Below are positions 10,770-26,337 of a stretch of 64,000 nucleotides of DNA, piece by piece. Position numbers and translations under genes: made by a program. The stretch spans positions 255,858-319,857 of IMG/VR virus record IMGVR_UViG_3300032245_001746, one strand, 5' to 3'. A model generated the notes under the pieces. The model made no database searches and was not told the origin of the DNA. It saw nothing but the letters and a program-made list of their open reading frames with translations. Numbering within the stretch: the first letter of the stretch is position 1; each line of letters starts with the position of its first letter.

Positions 10770-11180
10770 TTATGCAGCTTCTGCCGTTGTCGTCGGTTCC
10801 AGAACAACAGTTTCGACGGTTTCTTCTGCCGTTTCCGTTGTTTCGAGGACAACAGTTTCAGTTTCTTCGTCCGTTGGCAGTTCGACGTTCAGGTGTTCGC
10901 AGATCAGTTCGAGCATATCTGCGTTCTTGTCCGTCTTCGCGTCAACAATCGTGTCGATCAGAGAGGTAACAATTGTTCCCTTGAGGAACTGGAGAAGATA
11001 GTAACAGGCGAGTTCTGCGTCAGAACCCTGTTCCAGTGTCGCCATGAACTTGGCAAATACTTTTGCCATTGTCTTGTCGATTGTGCCGCCCTGTGAGTTC
11101 TTATTCTTAGAACCCTTCGGGCGTCCACGTCCACGCTTAGGAGCTTCGACGTTTACAGTTGTTTCGGCTGAATTTCCCAC
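10770..11180 (-). CDS. AT-hook protein with acidic C-terminal tail
   Basis: PKRGRGRPKGSKNKNS motif; E/T-rich tail. Confidence 0.8.
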   Translation of the reverse strand: MGNSAETTVNVEAPKRGRGRPKGSKNKNSQGGTIDKTMAKVFAKFMATLEQGSDAELACYYLLQFLKGTIVTSLIDTIVDAKTDKNADMLELICEHLNVELPTDEETETVVLETTETAEETVETVVLEPTTTAEAA

Positions 11181-11366
11181 GGCAGTAACCCTTTCAGAAT
11201 TGTTTTTGACTTGTCAACACCGTTGTTGACATCGTCATATTGTACAATCAAACTTCAAAGCCCTTCTCAACTTAGAGAAGGAAGTTTGACCTGACTCTTC
11301 CGAGTCATCTTTGAGTCATCCTTATGAGGAATCATTGTACAATCAAACTTAATTGATTTAAGGAAT

Positions 11367-11397
11367 AAAAAAAGCAGAGATGTATTATCTCTGCTTT
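11367..11397 (-). terminator. Intrinsic terminator after tRNA-Arg
   Basis: AAAGCAGAGAT/ATCTCTGCTTT. Confidence 0.85.
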
Positions 11398-11405
11398 ATA
11401 ATAAA

Positions 11406-11479
11406 TGTCCCCATCAGGGATCGAACCTGAAACCTACTGCTTAGAAGGCAGTTGCTCTATCCAATTGAGCTACGAGGAC
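11406..11479 (-). tRNA. tRNA-Arg(UCU), no CCA
   Basis: ACTGC-CTTCTAA-GCAGT anticodon arm; GTCCTCG/TGGGGAC acceptor. Confidence 0.92.
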
Positions 11480-11483
11480 AAAA

Positions 11484-11623
11484 GAAACAGACCGATTCAG
11501 CATTTCACTATCAATCAGGTGATACGCCCTTACTGGAACTGATATCCAATATTGAATATCAAAAGACGTTTTAAAGTGAAATTTTTTATTAATCCAGTTT
11601 ATCAGAATTGCTCAGTCTGTTTC
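11484..11623 (-). ncRNA. Candidate multi-stem RNA co-transcribed ahead of tRNA-Arg
   Basis: Nested stems plus a 7-bp pseudoknot, no ORF. Confidence 0.55.
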
Positions 11624-11646
11624 TAACTTCAAATTGTACAATCAAA

Positions 11647-11895
11647 CTATGCTGCGAGTCCAATTCGTTGATTCAATGAATTGAAGACACTTTCAACAAG
11701 TTGCTGTCCTGGAATCGGAAGATATTGCAACGTGAGAAGTCCATCGGTTTCAAGATCAAAAACAGACCCTACGTCTTCCATTTTGAATTCATAGGATTTC
11801 TGATTTGTGCATCTGACATAAAGTTCAACTCCTTTTTCAAAGGAAAGAAGTTTTGAACTTGTAGAATCATTTGTCAACAGAACGAAAAAAAACAT
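11647..11895 (-). CDS. Hypothetical protein
   Basis: AAGGA RBS; stop overlaps the repeat. Confidence 0.75.
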   Translation of the reverse strand: MFFFVLLTNDSTSSKLLSFEKGVELYVRCTNQKSYEFKMEDVGSVFDLETDGLLTLQYLPIPGQQLVESVFNSLNQRIGLAA

Positions 11896-11948
11896 GTTTG
11901 TTTCCTTGTGTTGTTTGAACCGACATCAACACATTGTACAATCAAACA

Positions 11949-12296
11949 TCACCAGCCGAATTCGATTTTTGACCGAACTTCATCAGACAATCCAGCTACA
12001 AAAACGGTCAAAGAAAAATCTTTGATCAATTTTCTGTAAACTTTGACACAATCAACAAAAGTTTTACAATCAATGTGAAAATCACGGAAATTGTCATTGT
12101 AGCCAAAAACATAGAATTCTGTTTTTGGTTTTGGTCTGGATTCGACACAGCCGCATTTTTCGCCATCAACACACAATGCGTCCAAAAATCCTTTTTTTGC
12201 ACGCCGATGTGCTTGCCACCATAGTGGACTTTTGTACTTTGGTGAAAAAACATCACCACAACTTTCACAAACAACATTGTACAGTGGAAGGTTCAT
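11949..12296 (-). CDS. Cys-rich putative zinc-binding protein
   Basis: CESC and further Cys; AAGGAG RBS. Confidence 0.75.
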   Translation of the reverse strand: MNLPLYNVVCESCGDVFSPKYKSPLWWQAHRRAKKGFLDALCVDGEKCGCVESRPKPKTEFYVFGYNDNFRDFHIDCKTFVDCVKVYRKLIKDFSLTVFVAGLSDEVRSKIEFGW

Positions 12297-12353
12297 CAGT
12301 GTTCTCCTTGATGACGAATCATTGTACAATCAAACTTTTTTGATTTAATCAAT

Positions 12354-12376
12354 AAAAAAGGAGGGTTTCCCCTCCT
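12354..12376 (-). terminator. Intrinsic terminator
   Basis: AGGAGGG/CCCTCCT with U-tract. Confidence 0.7.
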
Positions 12377-12405
12377 AGTAGTTTTAAATTGTAGAACGCT
12401 GTTTG

Positions 12406-12510
12406 CTAGAGTCCGAATTGATCCAGCAATTCTTCCAGACGACGCAATTCTCGTCGGTTCAAGCGATATCCAACAGACTTCAATCCGATAAGTCGGTCGA
12501 GTTCTTCCAT
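12406..12510 (-). CDS. 34-aa protein MEELDRLIGLKSVGYRLNRRELRRLEELLDQFGL
   Basis: Fills a promoter-terminator unit; below track cutoff. Confidence 0.6.
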   Translation of the reverse strand: MEELDRLIGLKSVGYRLNRRELRRLEELLDQFGL

Positions 12511-12564
12511 TTTTCTTTTTTCCAGAAGGGAGTGAAACAAATTGAACAACGTCACATTGTACAA

Positions 12565-12732
12565 TCAAACTTCTTCAGTTGAAACAACTGTAAATGAGTT
12601 GTCAACATATTGATTGTCTGAATTGTCTGGAATTTCAATGTCTTCAATGAGATCTTCTACAGTCTCACCGTCCTGGACAGTCAATTCGGTTTCAAATTTC
12701 ACCGAATATGTGACACGAATTTTCTTTGGCAT
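12565..12732 (-). CDS. Small acidic protein
   Basis: Start MPKKIR; ends EEV-TGA in the repeat. Confidence 0.75.
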   Translation of the reverse strand: MPKKIRVTYSVKFETELTVQDGETVEDLIEDIEIPDNSDNQYVDNSFTVVSTEEV

Positions 12733-12782
12733 TTTTGTTTTCCTGAGATTCACTAGATCAGAGATATGAGTACATTGTACAA

Positions 12783-13052
12783 TCAAAAACCAGAAAACGC
12801 ATCGTAGTATTTACTGAATGGTTGAGTTGTAGCAATTTCTTCAAGATTTTCGTTGGAAATCCAGCGAGAAAACGTTGAGTCGATATCGGTTGTGAATCTG
12901 ATTAAACTGCGATCTTCATCGCGATAAATCAAAACTCCCACATGATTTAACAAAGTTTCCTGATCTTCCACTTCTTCTTTTTTCATATTGTCATCAAAAT
13001 CAAAAACTGGTGCTTTTTTGATTTTGACATAAACAACATTATTTTTTGGCAT
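12783..13052 (-). CDS. Hypothetical protein
   Basis: Stop inside the repeat. Confidence 0.8.
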   Translation of the reverse strand: MPKNNVVYVKIKKAPVFDFDDNMKKEEVEDQETLLNHVGVLIYRDEDRSLIRFTTDIDSTFSRWISNENLEEIATTQPFSKYYDAFSGF

Positions 13053-13195
13053 GAAAGATCTCCGATAAGTAGAGATAGATATTAAGACACAAAGCCCGCA
13101 TTTTGTTTTGTTATTAGGTACATTACATGTGTCTTAACACTTATCCCTCGATATGAGTACATTGTACAATCAAACTTTATTGATTAAGTATAAAT

Positions 13196-13231
13196 AAAAA
13201 ACGTGAATCGTCTGGTAACGATTCACGTTTT
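13196..13231 (-). terminator. Intrinsic terminator
   Basis: AAAACGTGAATCGT/ACGATTCACGTTTT. Confidence 0.85.
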
Positions 13232-13338
13232 AATTTTAATTTTATTTAAAAATCTGAATACGCTCACATAATTCATTTTTGGTTGATTAGTCCAAAAATT
13301 GCTTTAGGAAGTCCAACCCTACTTAGACTCCTGCTAAA

Positions 13339-13506
13339 TTATGTGAGCCACCTGGGCAGTGATATAGAACACCAACGGTACTTGGCGAATTCCCGTTGGG
13401 TCTTGCTGTATTTTTCAACAGCTTCTTGAGATTCAAAATTAAGAAAGGGTTTTTCTTCAATGAATCCTACAACCACTGCCAGGATGATGAAAACCATCCT
13501 GAACAT
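13339..13506 (-). CDS. 55-aa membrane-anchored protein, paralog of 31157-31327
   Basis: AAGGAG RBS; EKYS..QR.FA..RW....WL motif. Confidence 0.75.
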   Translation of the reverse strand: MFRMVFIILAVVVGFIEEKPFLNFESQEAVEKYSKTQREFAKYRWCSISLPRWLT

Positions 13507-13546
13507 TTCTTTTTCTCCTTGATTGAGATATCAGAGAATTGTACAA

Positions 13547-13768
13547 TCAATCTTCGATAACGCCCGTACTGAATGTGTAAACGTTATCGGCATCTTCGTC
13601 ATTGTAGATCTCAAATTCATTTTCAAGAGATTCAATCTCTTCAGTATTCAACGGACGTTGAAATTGATTTTCAGCCAATTCTTTCAAGCGAATTTTTGCT
13701 TCATCCCAAGATGAAACCGCTGTACAAGCACCCAATGAATTGTTGTGAATTACACAAACAAACAACAT
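13547..13768 (-). CDS. Small acidic protein
   Basis: AAGGAG RBS; stop inside the repeat. Confidence 0.8.
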   Translation of the reverse strand: MLFVCVIHNNSLGACTAVSSWDEAKIRLKELAENQFQRPLNTEEIESLENEFEIYNDEDADNVYTFSTGVIED

Positions 13769-13814
13769 TTCTTTTTCTCCTTGATTGAGATATCAGAGAA
13801 TTGTACAATCAAAC

Positions 13815-14078
13815 TCAGAGTTCTTCCAATCCAAGACAATCAACAAAAGCCTTGACCAAATCACCATGAACACCACAATGAAGAACCTTGCCATCTGGAT
13901 TGGTAAGATCAAATCCGTCACCATCGAGACATGGAAGAATGGAAAGAACGTGATTTTCCTGTCGATCGTAAATCCGAACAACATTGTTCTGAGGAATAAC
14001 CTCAGTTGCGATATCAAATCGCTCATTAGAATCAGCAGCAGATTCCAGACGGTCCTGAACAGAATTGGAATTACACAT
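13815..14078 (-). CDS. Acidic hypothetical protein
   Basis: Start MCNSNS. Confidence 0.75.
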   Translation of the reverse strand: MCNSNSVQDRLESAADSNERFDIATEVIPQNNVVRIYDRQENHVLSILPCLDGDGFDLTNPDGKVLHCGVHGDLVKAFVDCLGLEEL

Positions 14079-14129
14079 TTTTTTGTTCCTTTGAGTTGTG
14101 TGTTGTTCCGATATCGGAAGATTGTACAA

Positions 14130-14399
14130 TCAAACTTCTTCAAGTGGCATTTCTCGTCCATATTGTTTAACATAATTAAACATATGAACATTAAAAATCA
14201 TAGATGGATCAAATGGTGTTTCATTCCATTTTATGATTTTGTAGTTTGATCTAACAGGACGATAAATACCAAGATCAATCCAACGTGATGTATCTCGATT
14301 TTCGATATTTGCTGAAATCCAATTTCCAACCACAACTCCATCCACCGCTACGAAAAAGCAATTTGGATTTATTGTGCTTTCAAGATATTGAATTTTCAT
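14130..14399 (-). CDS. Hypothetical protein
   Basis: Start MKIQYL; ends EEV-TGA in the repeat. Confidence 0.75.
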   Translation of the reverse strand: MKIQYLESTINPNCFFVAVDGVVVGNWISANIENRDTSRWIDLGIYRPVRSNYKIIKWNETPFDPSMIFNVHMFNYVKQYGREMPLEEV

Positions 14400-14634
14400 T
14401 TCGTCTCGGTAATAGAGTTTCTGCCACTGGCATTGAAACAGAATCAATTCCTTCGCCCAATGTTCCAATAGTAAACAATTTGATTCCAGTTGGAGACATT
14501 ACATCCCAATCACGACGATTGTCTGAGTTTTTCAGACAAATCAGCCCGCTGCGTTTTTCAAAACGCCGAATTGAATCTGGTTTTTGTATTGGTTTTTTCC
14601 CGGAAAATTTAGATAGCAAGTAAGTTCGGATCAT
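14380..14634 (-). CDS. Hypothetical protein
   Basis: GGAG RBS, MIRTY start. Confidence 0.75.
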   Translation of the reverse strand: MIRTYLLSKFSGKKPIQKPDSIRRFEKRSGLICLKNSDNRRDWDVMSPTGIKLFTIGTLGEGIDSVSMPVAETLLPRRNENSIS

Positions 14635-14684
14635 TGTCTCTCCAGTGTTGTTCCGATATCGAAGGATTGTACAATCAAACTTTA

Positions 14685-14873
14685 TCAATTGATTTTGAAG
14701 AACGCAATACGATACGTTTCAATCAAAATCAAAGATACAAATCCAGAAAGCACAACCATTGAAAGAGATTTAAAGTTGACTTCTGGATTCATTACCATGT
14801 TGTTAAAGAAAACTACAATCATGCCAATGAAAAAACTCATCAGAATTTGAAGAAATCGCAAAAATCGACTCAT
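14685..14873 (-). CDS. Small two-TM membrane protein
   Basis: Hydrophobic helices. Confidence 0.75.
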   Translation of the reverse strand: MSRFLRFLQILMSFFIGMIVVFFNNMVMNPEVNFKSLSMVVLSGFVSLILIETYRIAFFKIN

Positions 14874-14909
14874 GATTTTTTATGTTCCTGCATTGAAGGA
14901 ATTGTACAA

Positions 14910-15248
14910 TCAAACTTCCCAAGAGCACTCTGTTTCATGAAATTGATTCAGGCATTCTCTTGAACAAAAAGATGGATCATCAGCAAATTCTGATTTAATC
15001 CTACCATCAAGAATATGTTTTCCACAAATATGACAACAAAACATTTCTTTCAAATGATCAAGAATTGCTTGTTCAAGATTAGCAAAATGAGAAATCAGAT
15101 TGCAAGTTTCAATTCCGCCACCAGAAAAGCAACTGGAAGCTATTTCTTCAGCTTGTTTTTCAAGAGTATTGTGTCTTTTTACTTTTGACAAAGTCAATTG
15201 AAATTGTACAAAAGTATCAAGCAAAGCTCTAGCTTGAATATCGTTCAT
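14910..15248 (-). CDS. Protein with C-terminal CxxC...FCSxxC zinc finger
   Basis: CHIC and FCSREC; stop in the repeat. Confidence 0.8.
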   Translation of the reverse strand: MNDIQARALLDTFVQFQLTLSKVKRHNTLEKQAEEIASSCFSGGGIETCNLISHFANLEQAILDHLKEMFCCHICGKHILDGRIKSEFADDPSFCSRECLNQFHETECSWEV

Positions 15249-15287
15249 GTTGTTCTCCTAAGAGGAGATTGTACAATCAAACTTCAA

Positions 15288-15431
15288 TTAACTGAAATCC
15301 ATTTTCTCCAACCAATCAATGAAAACAACCAGAGCCAAGCTGAAAGCAAGAATGATTGGAAATCCAAGACAAATCAGATAATATGCAAATCCAACCCATA
15401 CTGTGGAATATGCCAAAAGAGCTTTTTTCAT
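15288..15431 (-). CDS. Small membrane protein
   Basis: AGGAG RBS, MKKALL. Confidence 0.7.
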   Translation of the reverse strand: MKKALLAYSTVWVGFAYYLICLGFPIILAFSLALVVFIDWLEKMDFS

Positions 15432-15459
15432 TGTTTTCTCCTGAAACAGGATTGTACAA

Positions 15460-15834
15460 TCAAACTTCATCAATTGATTTCAAATGATCATTAAATTGTT
15501 GCATGAGTGAACGAATGTTCTCTCTTCCAACTGTATTTGCTGAATGAACATAGAAATCAAAAGGTTTTGTGATATTTTTAACAATCCAATTGGCAACATC
15601 TTTGCCGGTTTTTGAGTTTTCACCAAGATCATGATCAAAAAAGATAAGATCATATACATTTGACGAAAGATATGCAATTGCTTCGTCATAATTGCGAGCA
15701 ATATGAACGTTTCGTCGATTTGCAGCAATGTATCTTCTTTGATCTTCATTGAAATTGGGAAGCATTGCCTTTTCGCGATATCGAAAAGAACAAACATAAC
15801 TAAAATCACGTTCATCATCAATGAAAAGAATCAT
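15460..15834 (-). CDS. Stand-alone receiver-like protein of the cyclic-phosphate-processing (cREC) type
   Basis: LFIDDER..ARNYDEA..DLIFFDHDLG..TGKDVA..HSANTVG. Confidence 0.8.
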   Translation of the reverse strand: MILFIDDERDFSYVCSFRYREKAMLPNFNEDQRRYIAANRRNVHIARNYDEAIAYLSSNVYDLIFFDHDLGENSKTGKDVANWIVKNITKPFDFYVHSANTVGRENIRSLMQQFNDHLKSIDEV

Positions 15835-15858
15835 TGTTAGCTTCCAAATTTAAGAAGA

Positions 15859-16044
15859 TTAAGTAGAAATTGATTCAATGAATTCTTGTTCGAATTCTTT
15901 GAATGACAATTCATGAACAAAAACAATTGTGCCTTTATCGATAGGCACAATTTCATATTTAGTTTTTATTCTTTGAATCAAATTCACATAATCTTCTTCG
16001 TGATCATAAATCGCAACAACGACAACATTGCTTCGAATTAACAT
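15859..16044 (-). CDS. Hypothetical protein
   Basis: Between tRNA-Leu and the cREC gene. Confidence 0.7.
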   Translation of the reverse strand: MLIRSNVVVVAIYDHEEDYVNLIQRIKTKYEIVPIDKGTIVFVHELSFKEFEQEFIESIST

Positions 16045-16063
16045 GGTTTTTATCCAAAAATAA

Positions 16064-16149
16064 TGTCGGAGACGGGAATCGAACCCGTACGCCCCTTCCA
16101 GGACCCAGGATTTTAAGTCCTGTGCGTCTGCCTATTTCGCCACTCCGAC
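16064..16149 (-). tRNA. tRNA-Leu(UAA), long variable arm, no CCA
   Basis: CAGGA-CTTAAAA-TCCTG anticodon arm; GTCGGAG/CTCCGAC acceptor. Confidence 0.95.
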
Positions 16150-16168
16150 GCATTTAATCATTGTACAA

Positions 16169-16357
16169 TCAAACTTCAGGGTTTGTTAATGGCCAAACAG
16201 AATATAACCATCTCAAACCCATTACATCAAATGCATCATCAAGTGATTTTCGAATTTTGTCAACATGCATAAAGGCTTCAGCCTCATTGAAAAATGGACC
16301 GTAAATTTGATGCACTCCATAGGGCTTTTCGACATAAATGATAAGAGTGTATTGCAT
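16169..16357 (-). CDS. Hypothetical protein
   Basis: Start MQYTL; stop in the repeat. Confidence 0.7.
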   Translation of the reverse strand: MQYTLIIYVEKPYGVHQIYGPFFNEAEAFMHVDKIRKSLDDAFDVMGLRWLYSVWPLTNPEV

Positions 16358-16430
16358 GATCAGTCCATTTTGTTTGTTGACTTCTGACATCGTCACATTG
16401 TACAATCAAACTTCATTGATTAAGTGTAAT

Positions 16431-16459
16431 AAAAAACAGGGATGTTTCCACCCCTGTTT
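16431..16459 (-). terminator. Intrinsic terminator
   Basis: AAACAGGG/CCCTGTTT. Confidence 0.8.
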
Positions 16460-16475
16460 CTCAGATCAATTGCCC

Positions 16476-16679
16476 TTAACCATTATGATCAAAATCGAAC
16501 TCAAATTCGTATTCGTCTTCAGACAAAAAGCAATCGAATTCTTCTTGAAGAATTTCATCAAAAAGAAGAATTTCTTCAATGTAATCATCAAGAAGAAGTT
16601 CGTCAAACAATTCGATTTCTTCTTCTCGATCTTCTTCAGTTGCTTCGAAGAAGTCGGGCAATGTGCTGGTACGAATCAT
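16476..16679 (-). CDS. Extremely acidic 67-aa protein (DNA-mimic candidate)
   Basis: 27 D/E versus 2 R; AAGGA RBS. Confidence 0.75.
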   Translation of the reverse strand: MIRTSTLPDFFEATEEDREEEIELFDELLLDDYIEEILLFDEILQEEFDCFLSEDEYEFEFDFDHNG

Positions 16680-16733
16680 TGGAAATTCCTTGAAGTTTTG
16701 ATTGAATTGAACCAACATCAGTCAATTGTACAA

Positions 16734-17015
16734 TCAAACTAATGTGGCACCTTCCGGAATTTGCCATTTTTCATTTTCTGATGGTTTTGGCTTAAACCAT
16801 GTTGATTCAATAGCATCAGAAGATGATTTTGCCATTGAACAAATGGCATTTAATTGCCACATTGCTTCTTTCAAATCATTCCGAGCAGACAAAAATAATC
16901 GAATCAATGTCTCAACATTATCTCGATTCGATACAATTTCATCAATAATGTGTTCAGGTACTTCATCACATTTCTCTGCTTCATCAAGCAGAGATAAAAT
17001 GTTTTGATTTGACAC
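16734..17015 (-). CDS. Hypothetical protein
   Basis: GGAG RBS, GTG start; stop in the repeat. Confidence 0.75.
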   Translation of the reverse strand: MSNQNILSLLDEAEKCDEVPEHIIDEIVSNRDNVETLIRLFLSARNDLKEAMWQLNAICSMAKSSSDAIESTWFKPKPSENEKWQIPEGATLV

Positions 17016-17017
17016 TT

Positions 17018-17641: not shown

Positions 17642-17674
17642 CTCAGCCTTTTAATTGAGAATCGCCAATTACTG

Positions 17675-20078: not shown

Positions 20079-20195
20079 TCAAACTCTGTGAAACCAATCT
20101 TTGATTTTCCAATAACCCGAATGTAAACAAACAAACGGAACGAAAATCAAGAAGAAATAAAAAACCCAACCAGCATGTTTCAAACTTTTAATCAT
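20079..20195 (-). CDS. 38-aa membrane peptide
   Basis: MIKSLKHAGWVFYFFLIFVPF...HRV, TGA in the repeat; below cutoff. Confidence 0.55.
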   Translation of the reverse strand: MIKSLKHAGWVFYFFLIFVPFVCLHSGYWKIKDWFHRV

Positions 20196-20202
20196 AAACC
20201 CT

Positions 20203-20778
20203 CTATTCATAGATTGAAAAGATTGCATTATATGCCTTCATTTCATAGGCAAGTGCATCACTTTCCACCAGAGAATCATTTCCTTCGTTGTAGATCAGAA
20301 AAGAAAGTGTATATTTAATGAATTTTGTGTAATTCTGTCTGCTATGACGATATTCATGTGCTAATGTAACAGCAATGATACCATCAGATTCAGAAAAAAC
20401 AGATTTGTTAACATACAACTTTTTGCTGATAAAGTCGTATTTTGCAAAATACCCCTTATCGTCATTGGTAAATACCAATTCCTTGTTTTCAATCTTTTCC
20501 TTAATCCAAATTGCAATTTTTGGATTAACCTCTTCCAAAATTTGGATAGCATTTTGGAGAGATTCCAGTCTTACCGAATCTGGAGTATTGGTGAAAATAC
20601 TGTATTTGTTTGAAACAATGTGTGGATCAATGTTAATCAAACTTTTGAAGTCATCAATTTCTGAGTCTTTTTTGCAATCAAAAAGAATGAAAGCCAAAAG
20701 ACTCAGACAAATTGTTGCCAACACACTTTTCTTGCAAAAAAATTCAAACATGATTGTTCTCTTCATAAGAGTTTTCAC
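20203..20778 (-). CDS. Putative exported HExxH zinc metallopeptidase
   Basis: N-terminal hydrophobic segment; LAHEYRH ... ESDA. Confidence 0.65.
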   Translation of the reverse strand: MKTLMKRTIMFEFFCKKSVLATICLSLLAFILFDCKKDSEIDDFKSLINIDPHIVSNKYSIFTNTPDSVRLESLQNAIQILEEVNPKIAIWIKEKIENKELVFTNDDKGYFAKYDFISKKLYVNKSVFSESDGIIAVTLAHEYRHSRQNYTKFIKYTLSFLIYNEGNDSLVESDALAYEMKAYNAIFSIYE

Positions 20779-20812
20779 CTTGATTCATATGAAGAGATTG
20801 TACAATCAAACT

Positions 20813-21283
20813 TTAGTTTGTCAAAATTGACTGAATTTCAGGTGCAAACAAATTGGCATTAGTTTCTGGCAAAGTCTCAACAATATGTTTGACAAGCATT
20901 GTTTTTGCTTCTGTCAACATAAGAGACAAATATTCTTGTGTAGCCAGAAAAGAAAAATCGTCTGCAAATCTGTTGAGAAATGCCTGTTTCAGAATTAACG
21001 ATGGAAGCTGATCAGCAATAATGTGTGCAATATTAATCACCAAAATAGGTGAAATAAGCGTGAATTTTGATGATCTTGACCAACTCCAAGTAGCAACACG
21101 ACTGTTCATTCTTGGATTTTTAGTATCCAACATTTCAGTGAATTGATCACATTTTTCATCTCTTGAAATGACAATATATTCAGTTTTCAGAGTGTTTTCT
21201 CCATTATCATGTTGTAAACGCTGTGTTGGAAAAAAATACTTTGAAGTAATTGGTTTCAATGTAAGAAACTCTGAAAGCGTCAT
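20813..21283 (-). CDS. Hypothetical protein
   Basis: Start MTLSEF. Confidence 0.75.
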   Translation of the reverse strand: MTLSEFLTLKPITSKYFFPTQRLQHDNGENTLKTEYIVISRDEKCDQFTEMLDTKNPRMNSRVATWSWSRSSKFTLISPILVINIAHIIADQLPSLILKQAFLNRFADDFSFLATQEYLSLMLTEAKTMLVKHIVETLPETNANLFAPEIQSILTN

Positions 21284-21481
21284 GTTTTTATTCCTAAAAG
21301 AGTTAGTAAAGACACATTGTACAATCAAACTGAATCAAATTCTAAGATTTGTTTGACTCAATAATATCCTGCATTTTTTTGTTGTAAATATCAACTAATT
21401 GTTGATATTCTGTGTTGAAACAATGTTGATTAATTGCGGACGGCATGTTGACCAACACAACCGCCAAACAAATAATAACAA

Positions 21482-21760
21482 TTATTCCATAGATGTGTGT
21501 GAACATGGTTGGTGATCCAAATCAATCGCAGTCAAAATTTTATTCAAGTGAATCCCACAAGAATTGACATATGGTAACACAAAAACTGTGCCAGATTCAC
21601 AATTCAATAACTCTTCTTGCAATTGACTATACCAATTCAGAGTTCTGAATTTATGATCTTCTTTAGAAGCTGATTCCAATTCATCCAAAGCTTCCAACAA
21701 ATTCAGTTCTTTTGAAATTGAAAGATTTTCATCTATCAAAATGAAAAAACGCTTTGTCAT
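21482..21760 (-). CDS. Hypothetical protein
   Basis: ORF on coding strand. Confidence 0.7.
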   Translation of the reverse strand: MTKRFFILIDENLSISKELNLLEALDELESASKEDHKFRTLNWYSQLQEELLNCESGTVFVLPYVNSCGIHLNKILTAIDLDHQPCSHTSME

Positions 21761-21877
21761 GTGAAATCATTTCTTGAAAAAAAAGAATAAAAAACAGTGG
21801 TTCGGAATCGTTTTGTTTTTTACCTAATGTCAATATTATTTTAGACTCAGGTGATTCGTTCCACTGTTTTTAGTTTT

Positions 21878-22183
21878 TCAACGAATAGTTCTCTGAAGAA
21901 AAGTCAAATCAAGTTGATTTCTTTCATTCAATCCAACTGCACGAATCAAATCAATTGTTTGAAAACACAACTTGACCGCTTTGAACACTTCCCAAGGATT
22001 CATACAATTATTCAAAATTTCAACCAACGCATCAGTACGTGGAAGAATCATTCCCATACACACAACAGTTTCACCTGTTTCATCAATAACCATTTTGATC
22101 GCATGATTTCCTGGAAGCTTTTCAATTCCAATCATCGTTCCAAAAATGACATTGTTGTCAGAATCAATGTGAATAATCTGCAC
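21878..22183 (-). CDS. Hypothetical protein
   Basis: AAAGG RBS, GTG start. Confidence 0.7.
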   Translation of the reverse strand: MQIIHIDSDNNVIFGTMIGIEKLPGNHAIKMVIDETGETVVCMGMILPRTDALVEILNNCMNPWEVFKAVKLCFQTIDLIRAVGLNERNQLDLTFLQRTIR

Positions 22184-22243
22184 TTGAATTACCTTTTGTT
22201 GAAAGAATTGTTAGTTCGATGTGAAGGAATTGTACAAGCAAAC

Positions 22244-22477
22244 TCAAAACAAGTTTGTGTAAAAATACTTTGCCAAATTTACACCAGCATATCCCAACAC
22301 TGAACAAAGGAACACAATTACAATCGTTGCAATTACGAAAGCAATTCGATCTTGAATCCAATAATTCTTTGGTTTTTCAAGAAAGATTCTTACCTTATCA
22401 GTTAAAGTAAAAAATGAAGCTGCAATTAACATTCCAATTACAGCATAAAAGAAAATTGAAGTAATCGTGGTCAACAT
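22244..22477 (-). CDS. Two-TM membrane protein
   Basis: AGGAG RBS, MLTTIT. Confidence 0.75.
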   Translation of the reverse strand: MLTTITSIFFYAVIGMLIAASFFTLTDKVRIFLEKPKNYWIQDRIAFVIATIVIVFLCSVLGYAGVNLAKYFYTNLF

Positions 22478-22529
22478 GAAAATCTCCTGAGTTTTGTAAA
22501 CTAACATACACTCATTGTACAATCAAACT

Positions 22530-22808
22530 TCAATCCAGTCTAATTGTATTTCCTTTTAAAAATCCACTTGTTACCGCACCAGTAACAATATGTCCACTTG
22601 GTGATTTTGCCTTGAAACCAGTAGAAAATGTATCGCTTTTTGATTTCATCCAAGGACGCCAACCAGTAATTTCAATTTCAGTGTAACCCTGTTCAGATAA
22701 TACTCTTTTTGTATTATCAGGATCAATTGCACCACCATTTGCAATCAAAATAACAAAAAAGAGTATTATCCCACAAAAGATCATTTCAATCAAACTAATT
22801 CTTTTCAT
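22530..22808 (-). CDS. Membrane-anchored hypothetical protein
   Basis: TM helix then L..QGYT.I.ITGW domain. Confidence 0.75.
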   Translation of the reverse strand: MKRISLIEMIFCGIILFFVILIANGGAIDPDNTKRVLSEQGYTEIEITGWRPWMKSKSDTFSTGFKAKSPSGHIVTGAVTSGFLKGNTIRLD

Positions 22809-22841
22809 TTCACTTTTCCTTTTAAAAACAGACAATCAGAG

Positions 22842-23252
22842 TTAAATGAAAGTTTTCCGAATATTTCCCGTTGATACTTTCCAAGTATAACCCGAATCCT
22901 GACTGTTTTGAGTATCTGAAAATAACTCAAGAATTATTTCGCTCTCATCACATGATTTAATTAACTCTGTTTCAGTTAATAAATCACGAATGGAATTCGT
23001 CTTATTCATTTCATCTTCATCATCCCAACCCATATTTTGCAGGGCTTGACCAAAAATACAACCCTTACAATCTGGTCCAGCCAATTTATTACCATCTATT
23101 GCTGGTCCATTCCAGGAACAAAGAACAACATGGTCAGAAGTGTTATAACGAAAATCAGGGTTTTCGTCTGCCAAACGAACAACTTCTTTTCTCAATTTCT
23201 CAAAAAAATCAAGTTGAGTACCATTACTCAGAATCACTTCTGAAATCTTCAT
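22842..23252 (-). CDS. Family A protein (ENPDF.YN..C...GP..CKGCIFGQALQNMGW..Q..QD.G..W)
   Basis: Paralog motif. Confidence 0.9.
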   Translation of the reverse strand: MKISEVILSNGTQLDFFEKLRKEVVRLADENPDFRYNTSDHVVLCSWNGPAIDGNKLAGPDCKGCIFGQALQNMGWDDEDEMNKTNSIRDLLTETELIKSCDESEIILELFSDTQNSQDSGYTWKVSTGNIRKTFI

Positions 23253-23469
23253 GTTGTATCCTTGTTATTAAGAGTTGGAGTGGAATCAATTATTCCACAC
23301 GTTAATGCTATTTATTCTAAAGTGCGACTCAAAAATGAATGAATAACTACATTTCCACTTTTTCGTGTTTCATAGCAATTCAAACATTCAAATAATCCAA
23401 CACTACATGTTCGAATTAACGTACCAGCCCTTCCATTTCCTGCCTTGCAGGTTTCACACTGATTAAATG

Positions 23470-23916
23470 TCATGGATTTTTACTTGTTTCTTGAAGCAAT
23501 TTTGAAATTCTTTCAATTGCTTTACCCCAGGATGCTCCATTATCCTGATCAACTTGTGTATCCCTAAAAGATACAATCCATTTGTGAGTTCGAGGAGTTA
23601 AAATATCAGCATATTCTGTACACAGTATTTCTGATATATTGTGTCCACAATTCATTTCGTTTTCATCATCCCAACCCATATTTTGCAGGGCTTGACCAAA
23701 AATACAACCCTTACAATCTGGTCCAGCTTGAATTGGTGTCACAGATAAAGATGTTTTCAAAGTTGCTGGACCATTGTAATGGCAAGAAGCAAGCCTTTCA
23801 GAAGTATTATACTGAAAATCAGGATTTTCCGTTCCCAATTTAACTACTTCTACTGCCACTTGCTTTACAAACTCAAGTTCAGAATTGAACTTGGCAATAA
23901 TTTCTTTTAAATTCAT
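23470..23916 (-). CDS. Family A protein
   Basis: Paralog motif. Confidence 0.9.
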   Translation of the reverse strand: MNLKEIIAKFNSELEFVKQVAVEVVKLGTENPDFQYNTSERLASCHYNGPATLKTSLSVTPIQAGPDCKGCIFGQALQNMGWDDENEMNCGHNISEILCTEYADILTPRTHKWIVSFRDTQVDQDNGASWGKAIERISKLLQETSKNP

Positions 23917-23971
23917 GATGTTATCCTTGTGGTTGATGTCACTCTATTGTACAATCAAACTTGATTTGATT

Positions 23972-24151
23972 TTACCACCATTCAGGTATTTCTTGATTTT
24001 TTTGATCTTCTTGATTTACATCAGAAATAACAAAAACTGGTGTTAGATTACCGTTTTGTTTCAATTTGATGTACATGCCTTTTACGATATATTTAATTTC
24101 ACCTTGATACAACAAAACTGTATCACCTGTCTGAAGAATAACGTTTGACAT
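23972..24151 (-). CDS. 59-aa hypothetical protein
   Basis: MSNVILQTGDTV...PEWW; below cutoff. Confidence 0.6.
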   Translation of the reverse strand: MSNVILQTGDTVLLYQGEIKYIVKGMYIKLKQNGNLTPVFVISDVNQEDQKNQEIPEWW

Positions 24152-24242
24152 GATTTTTATCTCAAATGGACTATAACAGAATTGAACTGTTTCTAATCAC
24201 TATTATCGTGATCGTGCTCCGTACACTAATAATCCAGAGTTT

Positions 24243-24497
24243 TCAACCAACCAAATGAATTACCAGCGAAATGATACTGGAAATTGCACAAACAATTGTT
24301 GAAATCCAAAGACCAATAGTAACATAAAACTTCTCGAAACCAATCGAATGCAATTTGTGAGAATTCAACTTATTCAAATCCATCTTGGATACATTTCCAA
24401 AAATAGATCGCACAGCAAAAACATGCCATGCCACAGTTGCAACAAACAAAACCACAGCAGAAACAGCAAAAATAACAAACAAATTCATTGCCGTCAT
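24243..24497 (-). CDS. Two-TM membrane protein
   Basis: Hydrophobic helices. Confidence 0.75.
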   Translation of the reverse strand: MTAMNLFVIFAVSAVVLFVATVAWHVFAVRSIFGNVSKMDLNKLNSHKLHSIGFEKFYVTIGLWISTIVCAISSIISLVIHLVG

Positions 24498-24859
24498 TTT
24501 CTCAACTCCAAAAAGAAATTCAAAACATCAATCGTAAAATAAATGGGTTCATTTTTTTGATCAACACCCGTTGTGTGACCATGAATCCATTTTTCAAATT
24601 GATCAACAAGACCAAATCCATCCAAATAATCAAACAGAAATTTCTGTGTATATCCCAACGCAGTGTTGGGAAGAATATGAATTTGTGATTTGATCCGCTC
24701 AATTGCAGTATCAACAACCAAATATTTCAATTCTTCAAGAGAAATGTTGCCATGAACTGGATGGGTATATGGCTTGTTGTCTCGAAAACAAGCCAATGCA
24801 GCCTGAACTTCTTTCAAAGCTGAAAAGGAAATTGAAGACAATTGTTCTTTTTTGCTCAT
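24494..24859 (-). CDS. Hypothetical protein
   Basis: GGAG RBS, MSKKEQ. Confidence 0.75.
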   Translation of the reverse strand: MSKKEQLSSISFSALKEVQAALACFRDNKPYTHPVHGNISLEELKYLVVDTAIERIKSQIHILPNTALGYTQKFLFDYLDGFGLVDQFEKWIHGHTTGVDQKNEPIYFTIDVLNFFLELRK

Positions 24860-24922
24860 CTTATAACTCCAGAAAAGATTGATATTAACACATTGTACAA
24901 TCAAACTTCATTGTATTAAAAC

Positions 24923-24953
24923 AAAAAAAGAACAGGAAAATTTCCTGTTCTTT
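24923..24953 (-). terminator. Intrinsic terminator
   Basis: AAAGAACAGGAAA/TTTCCTGTTCTTT. Confidence 0.85.
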
Positions 24954-25039
24954 AGCGATTTTTTAATAATTAGTGTTTTACTCGTCATTAACTAGAAAGT
25001 TAATTCTAATTAATACACCGCCAAACGCTCCACACTAAT
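24954..25039 (-). ncRNA. Candidate pseudoknotted RNA motif, copy 2
   Basis: See 8548-8652. Confidence 0.7.
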
Positions 25040-25111
25040 GTTCTACTTTATACTATTGTGAGTATTAAATCCTAATCAATAAGTAGAAAAATGATTAGGT
25101 CAAAAATATGA

Positions 25112-25285
25112 TTAACAGAACAGTTGTTCCATTGCTTTGTCAAATTCTTTTTCTGACATAGAACTCAAAACACCAATTTCAGGTGCCTTAGAAACAAACT
25201 TATTCTGATTTGTCTGCAAATTCGTAATGGTAAATCCACCATTCTCAGATCGAATTCTGTATTTTTTACTTTGAACGTTCATCAT
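25112..25285 (-). CDS. 57-aa hypothetical protein
   Basis: MMNVQSKKYRIRSENGG...; follows promoter 25301. Confidence 0.6.
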   Translation of the reverse strand: MMNVQSKKYRIRSENGGFTITNLQTNQNKFVSKAPEIGVLSSMSEKEFDKAMEQLFC

Positions 25286-25320
25286 TTCTCACAATCCTTC
25301 ATTGTACAATCAAACTTCAT

Positions 25321-25445
25321 GAAGTTGAACAATTAACTAATTACCTAATAAAAGTGGCACAATTCTAATTAAATAAGTTGTACTAGGCAGATATTTTGTA
25401 CCTATTAGGTAATCCACCCTGATAATTAGTTAGTTGCTCAAACTC
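25321..25445 (-). ncRNA. Candidate rod-shaped small RNA
   Basis: ORF-free unit between two repeats; long irregular hairpin. Confidence 0.5.
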
Positions 25446-25491
25446 ACAATTCTCGTATTGTACAATCAAACTTCATTAGAAGTAAATAAAT

Positions 25492-25527
25492 AAAACAGGG
25501 AATAAGAATTCATCATTCCTATTCCCC
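25492..25527 (-). terminator. Probable intrinsic terminator
   Basis: GGGAATA/TATTCCC stem, short U-tract. Confidence 0.55.
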
Positions 25528-25528
25528 G

Positions 25529-25606
25529 AGCGATTTTTTAATACTTAACGTTTTACTCGTACGTTTGTAATAAATACAAACACATCGCTAAACGCTCCAC
25601 GTTAAG
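25529..25606 (-). ncRNA. Candidate pseudoknotted RNA motif, copy 3
   Basis: P1 changed to CTTAACGT/ACGTTAAG (compensatory). Confidence 0.7.
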
Positions 25607-25711
25607 ATAATTGACCCCCAACATCATGGTCAATTGGACTAATTTTATCTGTAATAATTACCTCAAAACAACAACAAAAATTAGTTAAAAACCATTGTTT
25701 TGAGTGATGTA

Positions 25712-26152
25712 TTAAGCCGCTACGGAAACCTCAACCGGCTCAGGAGTCAGCAAATCAATATATGTCTGACCCTTTGCGTCAACGTGCTCAGAAACCATTG
25801 CGAGCAATTTCGCAGTGATATCTACACCACGGGTGAGATCAGAATAAAGATCCACCAATTCCGGCTTTGTACAAGAAGCACGAAGCTTTTCCATAATAAC
25901 TCGGTGAGTCTTATCAACAACTGCCGTTGCTGAATTCTTATTCTTAGAACCCTTCGGACGACCACGACCAGGCTTTTCAGCCTTAATCGGAGTAAGATCC
26001 AAAACAATTCCGTACTCCACAATCTTATCAGCAATATAACTTGCTGACAAATTCGTAGAACGTGCAACCGCATTGATCAACTGCAATTCATCCTTGCAGT
26101 TTTCAAAAGATCGCACTGACAAAATTGCTGCTTCGAGACGTGTCTTTTCCAC
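25712..26152 (-). CDS. AT-hook protein, paralog of 10770-11180
   Basis: KPGRGRPKGSKNKNS; GTG start after GGAG (alternative upstream ATG at 26206). Confidence 0.8.
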   Translation of the reverse strand: MEKTRLEAAILSVRSFENCKDELQLINAVARSTNLSASYIADKIVEYGIVLDLTPIKAEKPGRGRPKGSKNKNSATAVVDKTHRVIMEKLRASCTKPELVDLYSDLTRGVDITAKLLAMVSEHVDAKGQTYIDLLTPEPVEVSVAA

Positions 26153-26337
26153 TGTACTAAACTCCAAAAAAAACTGTTTTTGACTTGTCAACACCGTTGT
26201 TGACATCGTCATATTGTACAACCAAACTTCAAAGCCCTTCTCAACTCTGAGAAGGAAGTCTGGTTTCGACTCTCCTGAGTCTTCTTCACATCACCTCATT
26301 GTACAATCAAACTTCCTGTTAAAGAAGTATGTTTCAA

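What the first reader, a model, noticed from the sequence alone, without database searches (positions are those of the whole stretch)
10770..26298. Two AT-hook proteins, one HMGA-like, behind a duplicated regulatory unit
Seen: both carry GRGRPKGSKNKNS. The first also has an acidic tail. 11201-11272 and 26175-26246 match at 71 of 72 bp, including a GTCAACA/TGTTGAC leader hairpin. Each is preceded by a short ORF-free unit (11255-11333, 26229-26297) with two hairpins whose stems (CCTTCTC/GAGAAGG, GACTC/GAGTC) are kept while loops vary. Known: AT-hooks plus an acidic tail define eukaryotic HMGA and Myxococcus CarD and bind AT-rich minor grooves. Inference: phage chromatin or transcription factors that may act on the AT-rich element or displace H-NS-like silencers.
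Basis: partly seen in the sequence, partly recalled or inferred. Interest (0 to 1): 0.6.

Follow-up and report, generated by a model that had tools for sequence, protein, structure and literature searches.

The report
Megaphage AT-hook proteins behind tandem promoters
Two related small genes in the early-gene block of an uncultivated giant phage each carry one AT-hook DNA-binding motif identical in its core to a human HMGA1 hook, and both sit behind an unusual double promoter with conserved RNA hairpins, so they are probably abundant, tightly controlled DNA-binding proteins of a new small family, though nothing has been tested at the bench.

Summary
Gene A (10770-11180, minus strand, 136 aa) and gene B (25712-26152, minus strand, 146 aa) both encode GRGRPKGSKNKNS. 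A also has a C-terminal tail of net charge -12. The 72-bp repeat matches at 71 of 72 positions.

The proteins are paralogs, 37% identical over the hook plus a shared helical domain. Relatives occur only in a few related metagenomic phage contigs. All of them keep G-x-G-R-P-K-G-S-x-N and a C-terminal Ala-Ala, and dN/dS is 0.17-0.36. The only match among solved structures is AT-hook 2 of human HMG-I(Y). They are not HMGA or CarD homologs: each has one hook and a predicted folded domain, and nothing beyond the hook matches.

The "regulatory unit" is two copies of a 17-nt promoter-like motif. The motif's 14-nt core occurs 72 times exactly, all on the minus strand and all inside this window. The two AT-hook genes have the closest promoter pairs (85 and 95 nt) and by far the most stable leader hairpin. 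Their non-coding upstream DNA is about 30 times more conserved than synonymous sites.

DNA binding, any chromatin or H-NS role, and the function of the hairpin unit remain inference. I rate this a new variant of a known kind, of moderate interest.

The parts
10770..11180 (-). Gene A, 136 aa, GTG start. Residues 1-34 are basic and disordered and carry the AT-hook. Residues 35-98 form a predicted four-helix domain. Residues 99-136 are the acidic Thr/Glu/Val-rich tail, ending in Ala-Ala.
   Evidence: ORF. Orthologs are 78-92% identical with dN/dS 0.17-0.36. AF2 gives helices 36-47, 54-66, 71-81 and 84-96 at pLDDT 60-76, with the rest below 50.
11094..11138 (-). AT-hook of A (KRGRGRPKGSKNKNS, residues 15-29).
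   Evidence: G-x-G-R-P-K-G-S-x-N is invariant in 7 family members.
10773..10886 (-). Acidic tail of A, net charge -12, with imperfect ETVVLE-type repeats and a terminal AEAA.
   Evidence: The tail and the terminal AA are kept in P0004-P0007 and P0009.
10719..10744 (-). Intrinsic terminator after gene A.
   Evidence: 11-bp stem followed by a T-run.
11181..11238 (-). 5' leader of A. The hairpin spans 11207-11237 (core TGTCAACA / TGTTGACA), followed by an A5 tract and a weak RBS.
   Evidence: -14.9 kcal/mol; strongest of 77 leaders. The first 41 nt (11198-11238), through the A5 tract, are identical in B, L046, L077 and L078; L071 differs at one base (A to G at the first nt).
11239..11255 (-). Proximal promoter copy P2 of A (AAG + TTTGATTGTACAAT).
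11246..11291 (-). Extended stem-loop of unit A. A 10-bp outer stem carries the CCTTCTC/GAGAAGG hairpin (11262-11281) on top. The 3' arm of the outer stem is the first half of P2.
   Evidence: All cells pair, with one compensatory pair.
11293..11306 (-). Hairpin GACTC-GGAA-GAGTC of unit A.
11334..11350 (-). Distal promoter copy P1 of A, 95 nt upstream of P2. It is preceded by the terminator of tRNA-Arg (11371-11397).
25712..26152 (-). Gene B, 146 aa, GTG start after a T-run and GGAG. Residues 1-52 form a predicted three-helix, possibly HTH-like, domain. Residues 53-74 are a basic linker with the AT-hook. Residues 75-146 are a helical domain homologous to that of A, ending in VAA.
   Evidence: (37% identity to A, E 1e-11). 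The start is fixed by the ortholog indel. The HTH lead is weak.
25931..25975 (-). AT-hook of B (KPGRGRPKGSKNKNS, residues 60-74).
26153..26212 (-). 5' leader of B. The hairpin at 26181-26211 is identical to that of A, followed by A5, T8 and GGAG.
26213..26229 (-). Proximal promoter copy P2 of B, carrying the rare variant TTTGGTTG (2 of 77 copies).
   Evidence: The G is matched by a C in the upstream arm, here and in ortholog L077.
26220..26265 (-). Extended stem-loop of unit B (inner hairpin 26236-26255).
26268..26281 (-). Hairpin GACTC-AGGA-GAGTC of unit B.
26298..26314 (-). Distal promoter copy P1 of B, 85 nt upstream of P2.
25496..25528 (-). First intrinsic terminator downstream of gene B, after about 185 nt of untranslated sequence.

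Best explanation
**What they are.** A and B are paralogous products of the presumed early-gene block of an uncultivated myovirus-type megaphage. The record is 320 kb, about 63% complete and 28% GC.

**How the proteins most likely work (inferred).**
- Each protein uses a single canonical AT-hook in a disordered basic segment to sit in the minor groove of A/T-rich DNA. Such DNA makes up most of the phage genome and perhaps much of the host's.
- The helical domain shared by A and B supplies the second activity that a lone hook needs. That could be self-association or binding to another protein.
- A adds an HMGA-style acidic tail that can fold back on the hook or bind basic partners.
- B adds an N-terminal three-helix domain that may read DNA sequence.
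- The invariant C-terminal Ala-Ala is proposed to be an ssrA-like ClpXP degron that limits the proteins to a time window.

**How the genes are expressed (partly shown, partly inferred).**
- Both genes are transcribed from two tandem copies of the block-wide promoter. This is the only such close pair arrangement in the block and implies high output.
- The inferred start is the A located 7 nt after TACAAT.
- The proximal transcript then begins with a very stable 5'-terminal hairpin that probably stabilises the mRNA.
- The distal transcript carries a conserved two-hairpin leader whose long stem pairs with the RNA copy of the proximal promoter. Its role is unknown; it could be an attenuator, a small RNA or a processing site.

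**Shown:** motif, paralogy, conservation, purifying selection, promoter-like array, tandem arrangement, hairpin stability and conservation.

**Inferred:** DNA binding, early timing, transcription start site, mRNA stabilisation, degron, partner binding.
For: - **Hook.** RGRPKGSKNK aligns with HMG-I(Y) hook 2, the only PDB hit. It is invariant across three diverged lineages: the A type, P0009 at 43% identity, and the B type.
- **Real genes.** dN/dS is 0.17-0.36.
- **Shared domain.** A and B align through the region after the hook at E 1e-11. AF2 predicts helices there, at low confidence.
- **The motif is a promoter.**
  - There are 72 exact 14-mers (77 with a one-base variant), all on the minus strand and all within window 5.5-62 kb. 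None occurs in the other 256 kb.
  - The copies lie 20-50 nt before an RBS and start codon, 8-11 nt before three tRNAs, and directly after intrinsic terminators.
  - The motif contains TACAAT, and a conserved G-A-T-R-T-C follows at the expected start site.
- **Tandem arrangement.** The spacings of 85 and 95 nt are the two smallest of 76; the next is 152.
- **Leader hairpin.** At -13.3 kcal/mol it is the strongest of 77 leaders. Leaders in general are no more structured than random segments. P0007-type and P0009-type genes keep a hairpin at the same place with different stem tops.
- **Constraint on the upstream DNA.** Between the window and L046 there are 4 differences in 226 non-coding nt, while dS in the adjoining gene is 0.58.
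- **Structure counts.** All 170 cells of 34 proposed pairs form standard pairs in 5 variants, with one compensatory pair and four one-sided changes.
Against:
- A is strongly acidic overall (net -11). A single hook binds DNA weakly on its own, so DNA may not be the main ligand.
- The structure models are poor (mean pLDDT 54 and 45) and no fold match was found.
- The covariation support is not significant: 44 of 500 shuffles reach the observed score, and only 5 closely related variants exist.
- The distal unit is absent upstream of three family members, including an A-type gene with the same leader on L078. It is therefore not required.
- Its second hairpin fails the intrinsic-terminator scan.
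- The near-identity of the 72 bp could reflect recent gene conversion between promoter-flanked cassettes rather than selection.
Confidence: 0.55

Rival explanations
1. The upstream similarity has no function of its own. Promoter-flanked gene cassettes recombine at the 17-nt promoter repeats, and the 72-bp identity and the distal unit are recent gene-conversion or duplication products carried along with the genes.
For: - Cassette order differs between relatives. On L078 the small membrane-protein gene lies upstream of an A-type gene, whereas in the window it lies downstream.
- The related contig NODE_341 carries two A-type copies and one B-type copy with different upstream contexts.
- The identity is mosaic: the proximal promoter and leader are 98.6% identical, while the 5' part of the unit is much less similar and has an 11-nt indel.
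- The unit is missing before three family members.
Against: - The unit differs by 1 of 81 nt between A orthologs whose synonymous sites differ by 0.58 per site.
- Every change inside the proposed stems preserves pairing, while loops and linkers vary.
- The rare promoter variant G is matched by C in the upstream arm in two B-type lineages.
Confidence: 0.3
2. The distal promoter and hairpin unit form a small-RNA gene or attenuator. P1 makes a structured RNA of about 75-90 nt that ends at the extended stem overlapping P2, either as a trans-acting RNA or as a switch that sets read-through into the AT-hook gene.
For: - The unit has its own full promoter copy and no conserved ORF.
- Both hairpins are kept.
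- The second hairpin is followed by a U-rich stretch, which is longer in L077 (GGGGUUUUGAAGUUUG).
- Folding z-scores are -3.1 to -3.5 for the read-through form.
Against: - It is not called as an intrinsic terminator.
- It has no Rfam match.
- Unit B folded alone is not unusually stable (z -0.66).
- No expression data are available.
Confidence: 0.3
3. The proteins act mainly on proteins rather than DNA. A is an acidic decoy or DNA mimic that captures host nucleoid proteins or polymerase, and the hook only tethers it or serves as an internal partner of the tail.
For: - A has pI 4.5 and net charge -11, and its tail of 38 residues has no basic residue.
- The tail is kept, though variable in length, in the A-type relatives and P0009.
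- In HMGA2 the acidic tail contacts the hooks (PMC4482583, abstract).
Against: - B lacks such a tail and is near neutral, yet it keeps the hook exactly.
- The hook is the most conserved segment of the family, which is expected if it has an external ligand.
Confidence: 0.15
4. The proteins serve replication or genome tethering rather than transcription or chromatin, as proposed for AT-hook proteins of PM2-like elements and known for EBNA1 and fission-yeast Orc4.
For: There is precedent for AT-hook ORFs in phage-like elements interpreted in this way (PMC1950889). The phage genome is 72% A+T.
Against: The genes lie among roughly a hundred small, promoter-driven ORFan genes, not next to the replication genes (gyrase, DnaE and helicase lie 130-240 kb away). 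No origin-like element was linked to them.
Confidence: 0.1

Closest known systems
Eukaryotic HMGA1/HMGA2 (HMG-I/Y)
   Same: The AT-hook core is identical over ten residues to HMGA1 hook 2. The hook sits in a disordered basic segment. Protein A has an acidic C-terminal tail, as HMGA does (PMC4482583).
   Different: There is one hook instead of three. A conserved predicted helical domain lies between hook and tail, whereas HMGA has no folded domain. No sequence similarity exists outside the hook. B has no acidic tail. The organism is a phage, so convergence or motif shuffling is far more likely than descent.
Myxococcus xanthus CarD
   Same: It is a prokaryotic protein that combines AT-hooks with an acidic region and a second, protein-binding domain (PMC2919716, PMC4374960).
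   Different: CarD has an N-terminal CarD_CdnL_TRCF RNAP-binding domain, an acidic region before the hooks, and four hooks. Here there is no such Pfam domain, only one hook, and the acidic region comes after it.
Xenogeneic silencers with AT-hook-like motifs (H-NS, Lsr2, and phage-encoded Lsr2-like proteins such as CgpS)
   Same: They are small proteins pairing a minor-groove (Q/R)GR-type element for A/T-rich DNA with a helical protein-interaction domain. Some are encoded by phages or prophages (PMC8476142, PMC5137423).
   Different: There is no Pfam match to H-NS or Lsr2 families. The hook here is the full canonical R-G-R-P type in a disordered linker, not a loop of a folded DNA-binding domain. 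Oligomerisation is not shown.
AT-hook ORFs noted in PM2-like prophages and Ralstonia filamentous phages
   Same: They are phage-borne proteins annotated by an AT-hook only (PMC1950889).
   Different: There is no detectable homology. Those were proposed as replication proteins of small elements. The present genes belong to a promoter-array block of a megaphage.
Multi-AT-hook proteins of metagenomes (for example P0010 and P0019)
   Same: They carry the same hook variant, KRGRGRPKGS(K/L)NK.
   Different: In those proteins the hook is repeated 3-10 times with no other shared domain. The present family has one hook plus a private helical domain.

Membership tests
AT-hook motif (SMART SM00384 / Pfam PF02178; Aravind and Landsman definition, from my own knowledge) | Core Arg-Gly-Arg-Pro with an invariant Gly-Arg-Pro, flanked by basic residues. 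| tested here: met
   GRGRPKGSKNK is present in A and B. A profile aligns it to HMG-I(Y) hook 2 of entries 2EZD/2EZE at E 0.01, the only PDB hit. G-R-P-K-G-S is invariant in 7 family members. The Pfam scan itself gave no hit, as expected for a 13-residue model.
AT-hook motif | Binds the minor groove of A/T-rich DNA. | not testable with these tools
   Needs EMSA or footprinting with minor-groove competitors.
HMGA family | Three AT-hooks per polypeptide. | tested here: not met
   There is one hook in A and one in B.
HMGA family | Acidic C-terminal tail. | tested here: met
   Met for A (net -12 over residues 99-136) and for its orthologs and P0009. Not met for B, whose residues 75-146 have net charge -3.
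HMGA family | No folded domain; intrinsically disordered throughout. | tested here: inconclusive
   AF2 predicts four helices in A (36-96) at pLDDT 60-76, and six helices in B at pLDDT below 65. This stretch is well conserved among A-type orthologs, but the models are of low confidence.
HMGA family | Sequence homology beyond the hook. | tested here: not met
   A profile search of 1.84 billion representatives found only 5 full-length matches, all from this phage group. The other 43 hits cover the hook only.
CarD (Myxococcus) type | N-terminal CarD_CdnL_TRCF RNAP-interacting domain. | tested here: not met
   No Pfam family matched at E up to 1, and none in NCBIfam.
CarD (Myxococcus) type | Acidic region followed by four AT-hooks at the C-terminus. 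| tested here: not met
   There is a single hook near the N-terminus of A, with the acidic region after it.
H-NS / Lsr2-like xenogeneic silencers | Homology to H-NS or Lsr2 domains. | tested here: not met
   No Pfam, NCBIfam or PHROG family match of significance.
H-NS / Lsr2-like xenogeneic silencers | Oligomerisation domain that allows filament or bridge formation. | not testable with these tools
   Needs SEC-MALS or cross-linking of the helical domain.
Sigma-70-type promoter (for the 17-nt motif) | A -10 hexamer close to TATAAT at a fixed distance from the start. | tested here: met
   TACAAT is invariant in 75 of 77 copies. A conserved purine lies 7 nt downstream. tRNAs begin 8-11 nt after the motif.
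Sigma-70-type promoter (for the 17-nt motif) | A -35 hexamer close to TTGACA 16-18 nt upstream. | tested here: not met
   Information content is about 0 upstream of position -5 relative to the motif. The conserved block instead abuts the -10 (AAGTTTGATTG). Recognition by a modified host polymerase or by the phage sigma-like ORF is possible but untested.
Intrinsic terminator (for the CCTTCTC hairpin) | GC-rich stem followed directly by a T-run. | tested here: not met
   It is not reported by the scan, although neighbouring true terminators are. The tail is GCTTTGAAGTTTG.

The most novel reading that the evidence does not exclude
The two genes and their upstream RNA elements form a self-contained timing circuit for a phage-made, HMGA-like nucleoid protein. 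Double promoters and a 5'-terminal hairpin give a burst of protein. The distal structured RNA, which pairs with the RNA copy of the proximal promoter, tunes that burst. A C-terminal Ala-Ala degron then removes the protein. The proteins coat or remodel A/T-rich DNA, either the phage's own 72% A+T genome or the host nucleoid, to counter silencing or to switch from early to later transcription. This would be the first functional HMGA analogue described in a bacterial virus.
Probability: 0.15. Interest if true: 0.7.

Novelty: new variant of a known kind. Interest (0 to 1): 0.45.

Why it matters
AT-hooks are well understood in eukaryotic chromatin proteins and in a few bacterial regulators, but I found no functional study of one in a phage. 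The literature search returned only annotations.

A giant phage with 72% A+T DNA must protect, organise and time the reading of DNA that host silencers target. A small, highly expressed protein with an HMGA-type hook is a plausible tool for that, and it is easy to test.

The surrounding array is a ready-made system for studying phage-specific promoter recognition. It holds 72 exact copies of one promoter-like motif, confined to a 57-kb block. The two AT-hook genes are the only ones in it with tandem promoters, an exceptional leader hairpin and hyper-conserved non-coding DNA.

Tried and rejected
- **Family libraries.** Pfam, PHROGs, NCBIfam and PADLOC scans of A and B gave no significant family.
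- **Phage records.** tblastn of B against 50,697 phage records found no match. megablast of 18 kb matched only tRNA genes.
- **IMG/VR.** The scan with B found no relative.
- **Related phage record G001.** It shares the promoter motif (12 copies), but its held 102 kb contains no relative of B.
- **Structure prediction.** The models were too poor to use (pLDDT 54 and 45). Foldseek against the PDB found nothing at E below 1.
- **ESM Atlas.** Whole B gave nothing. The N-terminal 56 residues gave only low-score HTH-type leads at 0.76-0.79, a level that shuffled sequences often reach.
- **Homodimer test.** The run on A residues 30-100 returned no verdict (collected). It counts neither for nor against self-association.
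- **Rfam.** The region contains only tRNAs above threshold.
- **Idea rejected: recoded TGA.** Reading TGA as sense raises long-ORF coverage in this block. However, TGA sits as the stop directly in front of many promoter copies, so it is simply the commonest stop.
- **Idea rejected: B starts at the leader ATG.** The public gene call of 164 aa uses that start, but the ortholog frameshift in the T-run rules it out.
- **Idea rejected: 5' hairpins are general to these transcripts.** Leaders are no more stable than random segments (p = 0.57).
- **P0002.** This hit is a glycosyltransferase N-terminus joined to the C-terminal half of B on a 2-kb contig. It is almost certainly an assembly chimera and was used only as a source of B-type DNA.
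- **Literature.** The promoter motif was not found in any paper.

Full report
**Setting.** The window is the last 64 kb of a 319,857-bp IMG/VR virus record, estimated 63% complete and 28% GC.

- Elsewhere the record encodes a T4-type portal, a tail sheath, gyrase A and B, a DnaE-type polymerase, RecA, helicases, several inteins, 21 tRNAs, a tmRNA and one sigma-70-region-2 ORF.
- It is therefore an uncultivated myovirus-type megaphage that reads the standard genetic code.
- No similar phage is present in the GenBank phage collection.

**The observation.**

- Gene A (10770-11180, minus strand, 136 aa) and gene B (listed as 25712-26221) both encode GRGRPKGSKNKNS.
- A degenerate DNA pattern for the hook finds only these two sites in the window, with none expected by chance.
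- The tail of A (residues 99-136) has net charge -12 and no basic residue.
- The stems GACTC/GAGTC and CCTTCTC/GAGAAGG are identical in both upstream units, and the loops differ.

**Start of gene B.** In a B-type ortholog (L077) the leader has seven T instead of eight. This puts the upstream ATG out of frame but leaves the ORF from GTG 26152 intact. B therefore starts at that GTG, behind a T-run and GGAG as in several neighbouring genes, and is 146 aa long.

**The proteins.**

- A and B are paralogs, 37% identical over 84 residues covering the hook and the region after it (E 1e-11).
- A word-based search of 5.8 billion proteins and an exhaustive profile search of 1.84 billion cluster representatives found full-length relatives only in a handful of metagenomic contigs:
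  - four A-type proteins at 78-92% identity;
  - one distant relative, P0009, at 43% identity, with the same hook, helical domain and acidic tail layout;
  - B-type copies.
- The other 43 significant hits of the profile search match the hook alone, mostly in proteins with 3-10 tandem hooks of the same variant.
- Across the family G-x-G-R-P-K-G-S-x-N is invariant, and so is a C-terminal Ala-Ala.
- dN/dS between orthologs is 0.17-0.36, so these are real genes under purifying selection.
- The only hit of the family profile among solved structures is hook 2 of human HMG-I(Y) bound to DNA (2EZD/2EZE). Ten consecutive residues are identical.
- AlphaFold models are poor. They place four helices at residues 36-96 of A. 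In B they place three helices on each side of a disordered hook linker.
- Foldseek found nothing.
- Language-model neighbours of the N-terminal 56 residues of B are all helix-turn-helix families, but at scores that carry little weight.
- A third, unrelated ORF with an AT-hook-like KKGGRPKKDKK lies elsewhere in the genome.

**The upstream region.**

- The 14-mer TTTGATTGTACAAT occurs 72 times exactly, and 77 times with a one-base variant. Every copy is on the minus strand between window positions 5.5 and 62 kb. None lies in the remaining 256 kb of the genome.
- With the preceding AAG it forms a nearly invariant 17-mer. Nothing further upstream is conserved. Downstream there is a weaker G-A-T-R-T-C.
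- Copies lie 20-50 nt before an RBS and start codon of almost every small gene and 8-11 nt before three tRNA genes. Many follow directly after intrinsic terminators.
- This is the signature of a promoter. The hexamer TACAAT is a good -10 element, and the conserved A seven nucleotides later is the inferred start.
- The absence of a -35 element and the conserved block abutting the -10 suggest recognition by a modified host polymerase or a phage factor. This was not resolved.
- The same motif marks related contigs from other samples.

**What sets the two AT-hook genes apart within this array.**

- *Tandem promoters.* Their promoter pairs are the two most closely spaced of all, at 85 and 95 nt; the next is 152 nt.
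- *Leader hairpin.*
  - The leader after the proximal promoter folds into a hairpin of -13.3 kcal/mol, the strongest of 77 leaders; the next is -8.8. Leaders in general are no more structured than random segments of the block.
  - With the inferred start, the hairpin begins at the second nucleotide of the mRNA. From general knowledge of bacterial mRNA decay, a 5'-terminal hairpin protects against 5'-end-dependent decay.
  - P0007-type and P0009-type genes have a hairpin at the same place with the same base (TGTCA ... TGACA or TGATA) but different stem tops, followed by an A-tract. The hairpin therefore looks ancestral to the family.
- *Extended stem.*
  - The unit between the promoters contains the GACTC hairpin and an extended stem. 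Ten outer pairs join a segment upstream of the CCTTCTC hairpin to the first half of the proximal promoter.
  - B carries the rare promoter variant TTTGGTTG, found in 2 of 77 copies. The G is matched by a C in the upstream arm, here and in the ortholog L077.
  - Over five variants all 170 cells of 34 pairs are standard pairs, with one compensatory pair and four one-sided changes. Loops and linkers vary.
  - With so few and so similar sequences this is not statistically significant: 44 of 500 shuffles reach the observed score.
- *Conservation.* The non-coding 226 nt upstream of A differs at 4 positions from the ortholog on L046, whereas synonymous sites of the adjoining gene differ by 0.58 per site.

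**Caveats on the unit.**

- It is absent before the P0007-type and P0009-type genes, and before an A-type gene on L078 that has the same leader.
- The second hairpin is not a canonical terminator.
- Gene order around these cassettes differs between relatives, so recombination at promoter repeats could have spread the segment.
- No RNA data could be obtained.

**Interpretation.**

- The hook, its conservation and its disordered basic context make minor-groove binding to A/T-rich DNA the most likely activity.
- A single hook is weak on its own. The conserved helical domain is therefore expected to provide oligomerisation or a partner contact. The one complex-prediction run gave no verdict and is not used as evidence.
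- The acidic tail of A parallels the tail of HMGA, which contacts the hooks in HMGA2 (PMC4482583). Alternatively it may mimic DNA towards host proteins.
- The invariant terminal Ala-Ala resembles the end of the ssrA tag. The phage's own tmRNA tag ends in LAA. By analogy with ClpXP recognition of ssrA-like C-termini, known to me from the literature, this suggests programmed turnover. That is inference only.
- Tandem promoters and a stabilising leader fit a protein needed in large amounts, as architectural DNA-binding proteins are.
- The genes are 44-49% GC in a 28% GC genome, and the whole distal part of the promoter block is GC-enriched. I cannot explain this.

**Comparison with known families.**

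- The proteins work like AT-hook proteins, and A resembles HMGA in charge layout. They still fail the HMGA membership tests for three hooks, lack of a folded domain and homology beyond the hook.
- They fail the CarD tests for the CarD_CdnL_TRCF domain and for four hooks after the acidic region (PMC2919716, PMC4374960).
- They show no homology to H-NS or Lsr2-type silencers, although the logic of a minor-groove element plus a helical interaction domain is similar (PMC8476142, PMC5137423).
- AT-hook ORFs have been noted in PM2-like prophages and Ralstonia filamentous phages, where they were proposed as replication proteins (PMC1950889). I found no functional study of a phage AT-hook protein.

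**Verdict.** This is a real, conserved, small family of phage AT-hook proteins with an unusual and strongly conserved expression module. The proposed chromatin or anti-silencing function is plausible but untested.

Noticed in passing
window 5516-61807, minus strand: There are 72 exact copies (77 with a one-base variant) of TTTGATTGTACAAT, usually preceded by AAG. All are on one strand and none lies in the other 256 kb of the genome. The core ATTGTACAAT is a perfect 10-bp palindrome. Copy density falls from 30 per 10 kb at the 5.5-15 kb end to 3 per 10 kb near 60 kb. The motif was not found in the literature.
   Followed up: partly
window 6000-62000: GC falls steadily along the promoter block, from 41% at 6-8 kb to 28% at 62 kb. 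The AT-hook genes are 44-49% GC in a 28% GC genome. This is unexplained.
   Followed up: no
window 8696-8769, 16064-16149, 61710-61783: Three tRNA genes (Lys, Leu, Lys) start 8-11 nt after a promoter copy. This helps place the transcription start within a few nucleotides of TACAAT.
   Followed up: partly
window 22842-23252, 23470-23916, 27032-27454, 27483-27938: Four or more paralogs of a roughly 140-aa protein share GP(D/E)CKGCIFGQA(L/F)QNMGW. They have no Pfam family, and each has its own promoter copy.
   Followed up: no
window 15460-15834: A stand-alone cREC_REC (cyclic-phosphate processing receiver) domain protein matches PF20274 at E 2e-23. A relative sits in the same block on another contig.
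   Followed up: no
window 5242-5514: Three direct repeats of a 30-nt A/T-rich unit ending in TTTTGTAACAATT lie in the non-coding stretch just beyond the last promoter copy. The neighbouring 2.6-5.2 kb is 18-22% GC but coding.
   Followed up: no
window 11194-11238; L046 15306-15360; L050 464-517: Each A-type, P0007-type and P0009-type leader holds a short ORF of 5-14 codons starting at an ATG at or near the inferred transcript start. The A-type and P0007-type short ORFs end at a TGA 13 nt before the real start codon; the P0009-type one ends 32 nt before it. In B the same ATG runs into the gene, but the ortholog indel shows it is not conserved in frame.
   Followed up: partly
window 25301-25470: Another promoter pair, 156 nt apart, has no ORF of 40 aa or more between the copies. 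It lies just downstream of the terminator of gene B.
   Followed up: no
L078 1-1258 versus window 10462-11180: In a related contig the 68-aa membrane-protein gene lies directly upstream of an A-type gene, whereas in the window it lies downstream of A. Promoter-flanked cassettes appear to be reshuffled between relatives. L004 is a likely assembly chimera joining a glycosyltransferase gene to the 3' half of a B-type gene.
   Followed up: partly
genome G000:C1:158122-158589 (outside the window): A 155-aa ORF ends with an AT-hook-like KKGGRPKKDKK. It is unrelated to A and B.
   Followed up: no
genome G000:C1:29678-30043 and several large genes (outside the window): The phage encodes a tmRNA (Rfam 76.6 bits; tag GETVRLAA by ARAGORN). 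Inteins or LAGLIDADG insertions occur in gyrase B, DnaE, the portal, RecA and a helicase. A sigma-70 region-2 ORF lies at 121.7 kb.
   Followed up: partly
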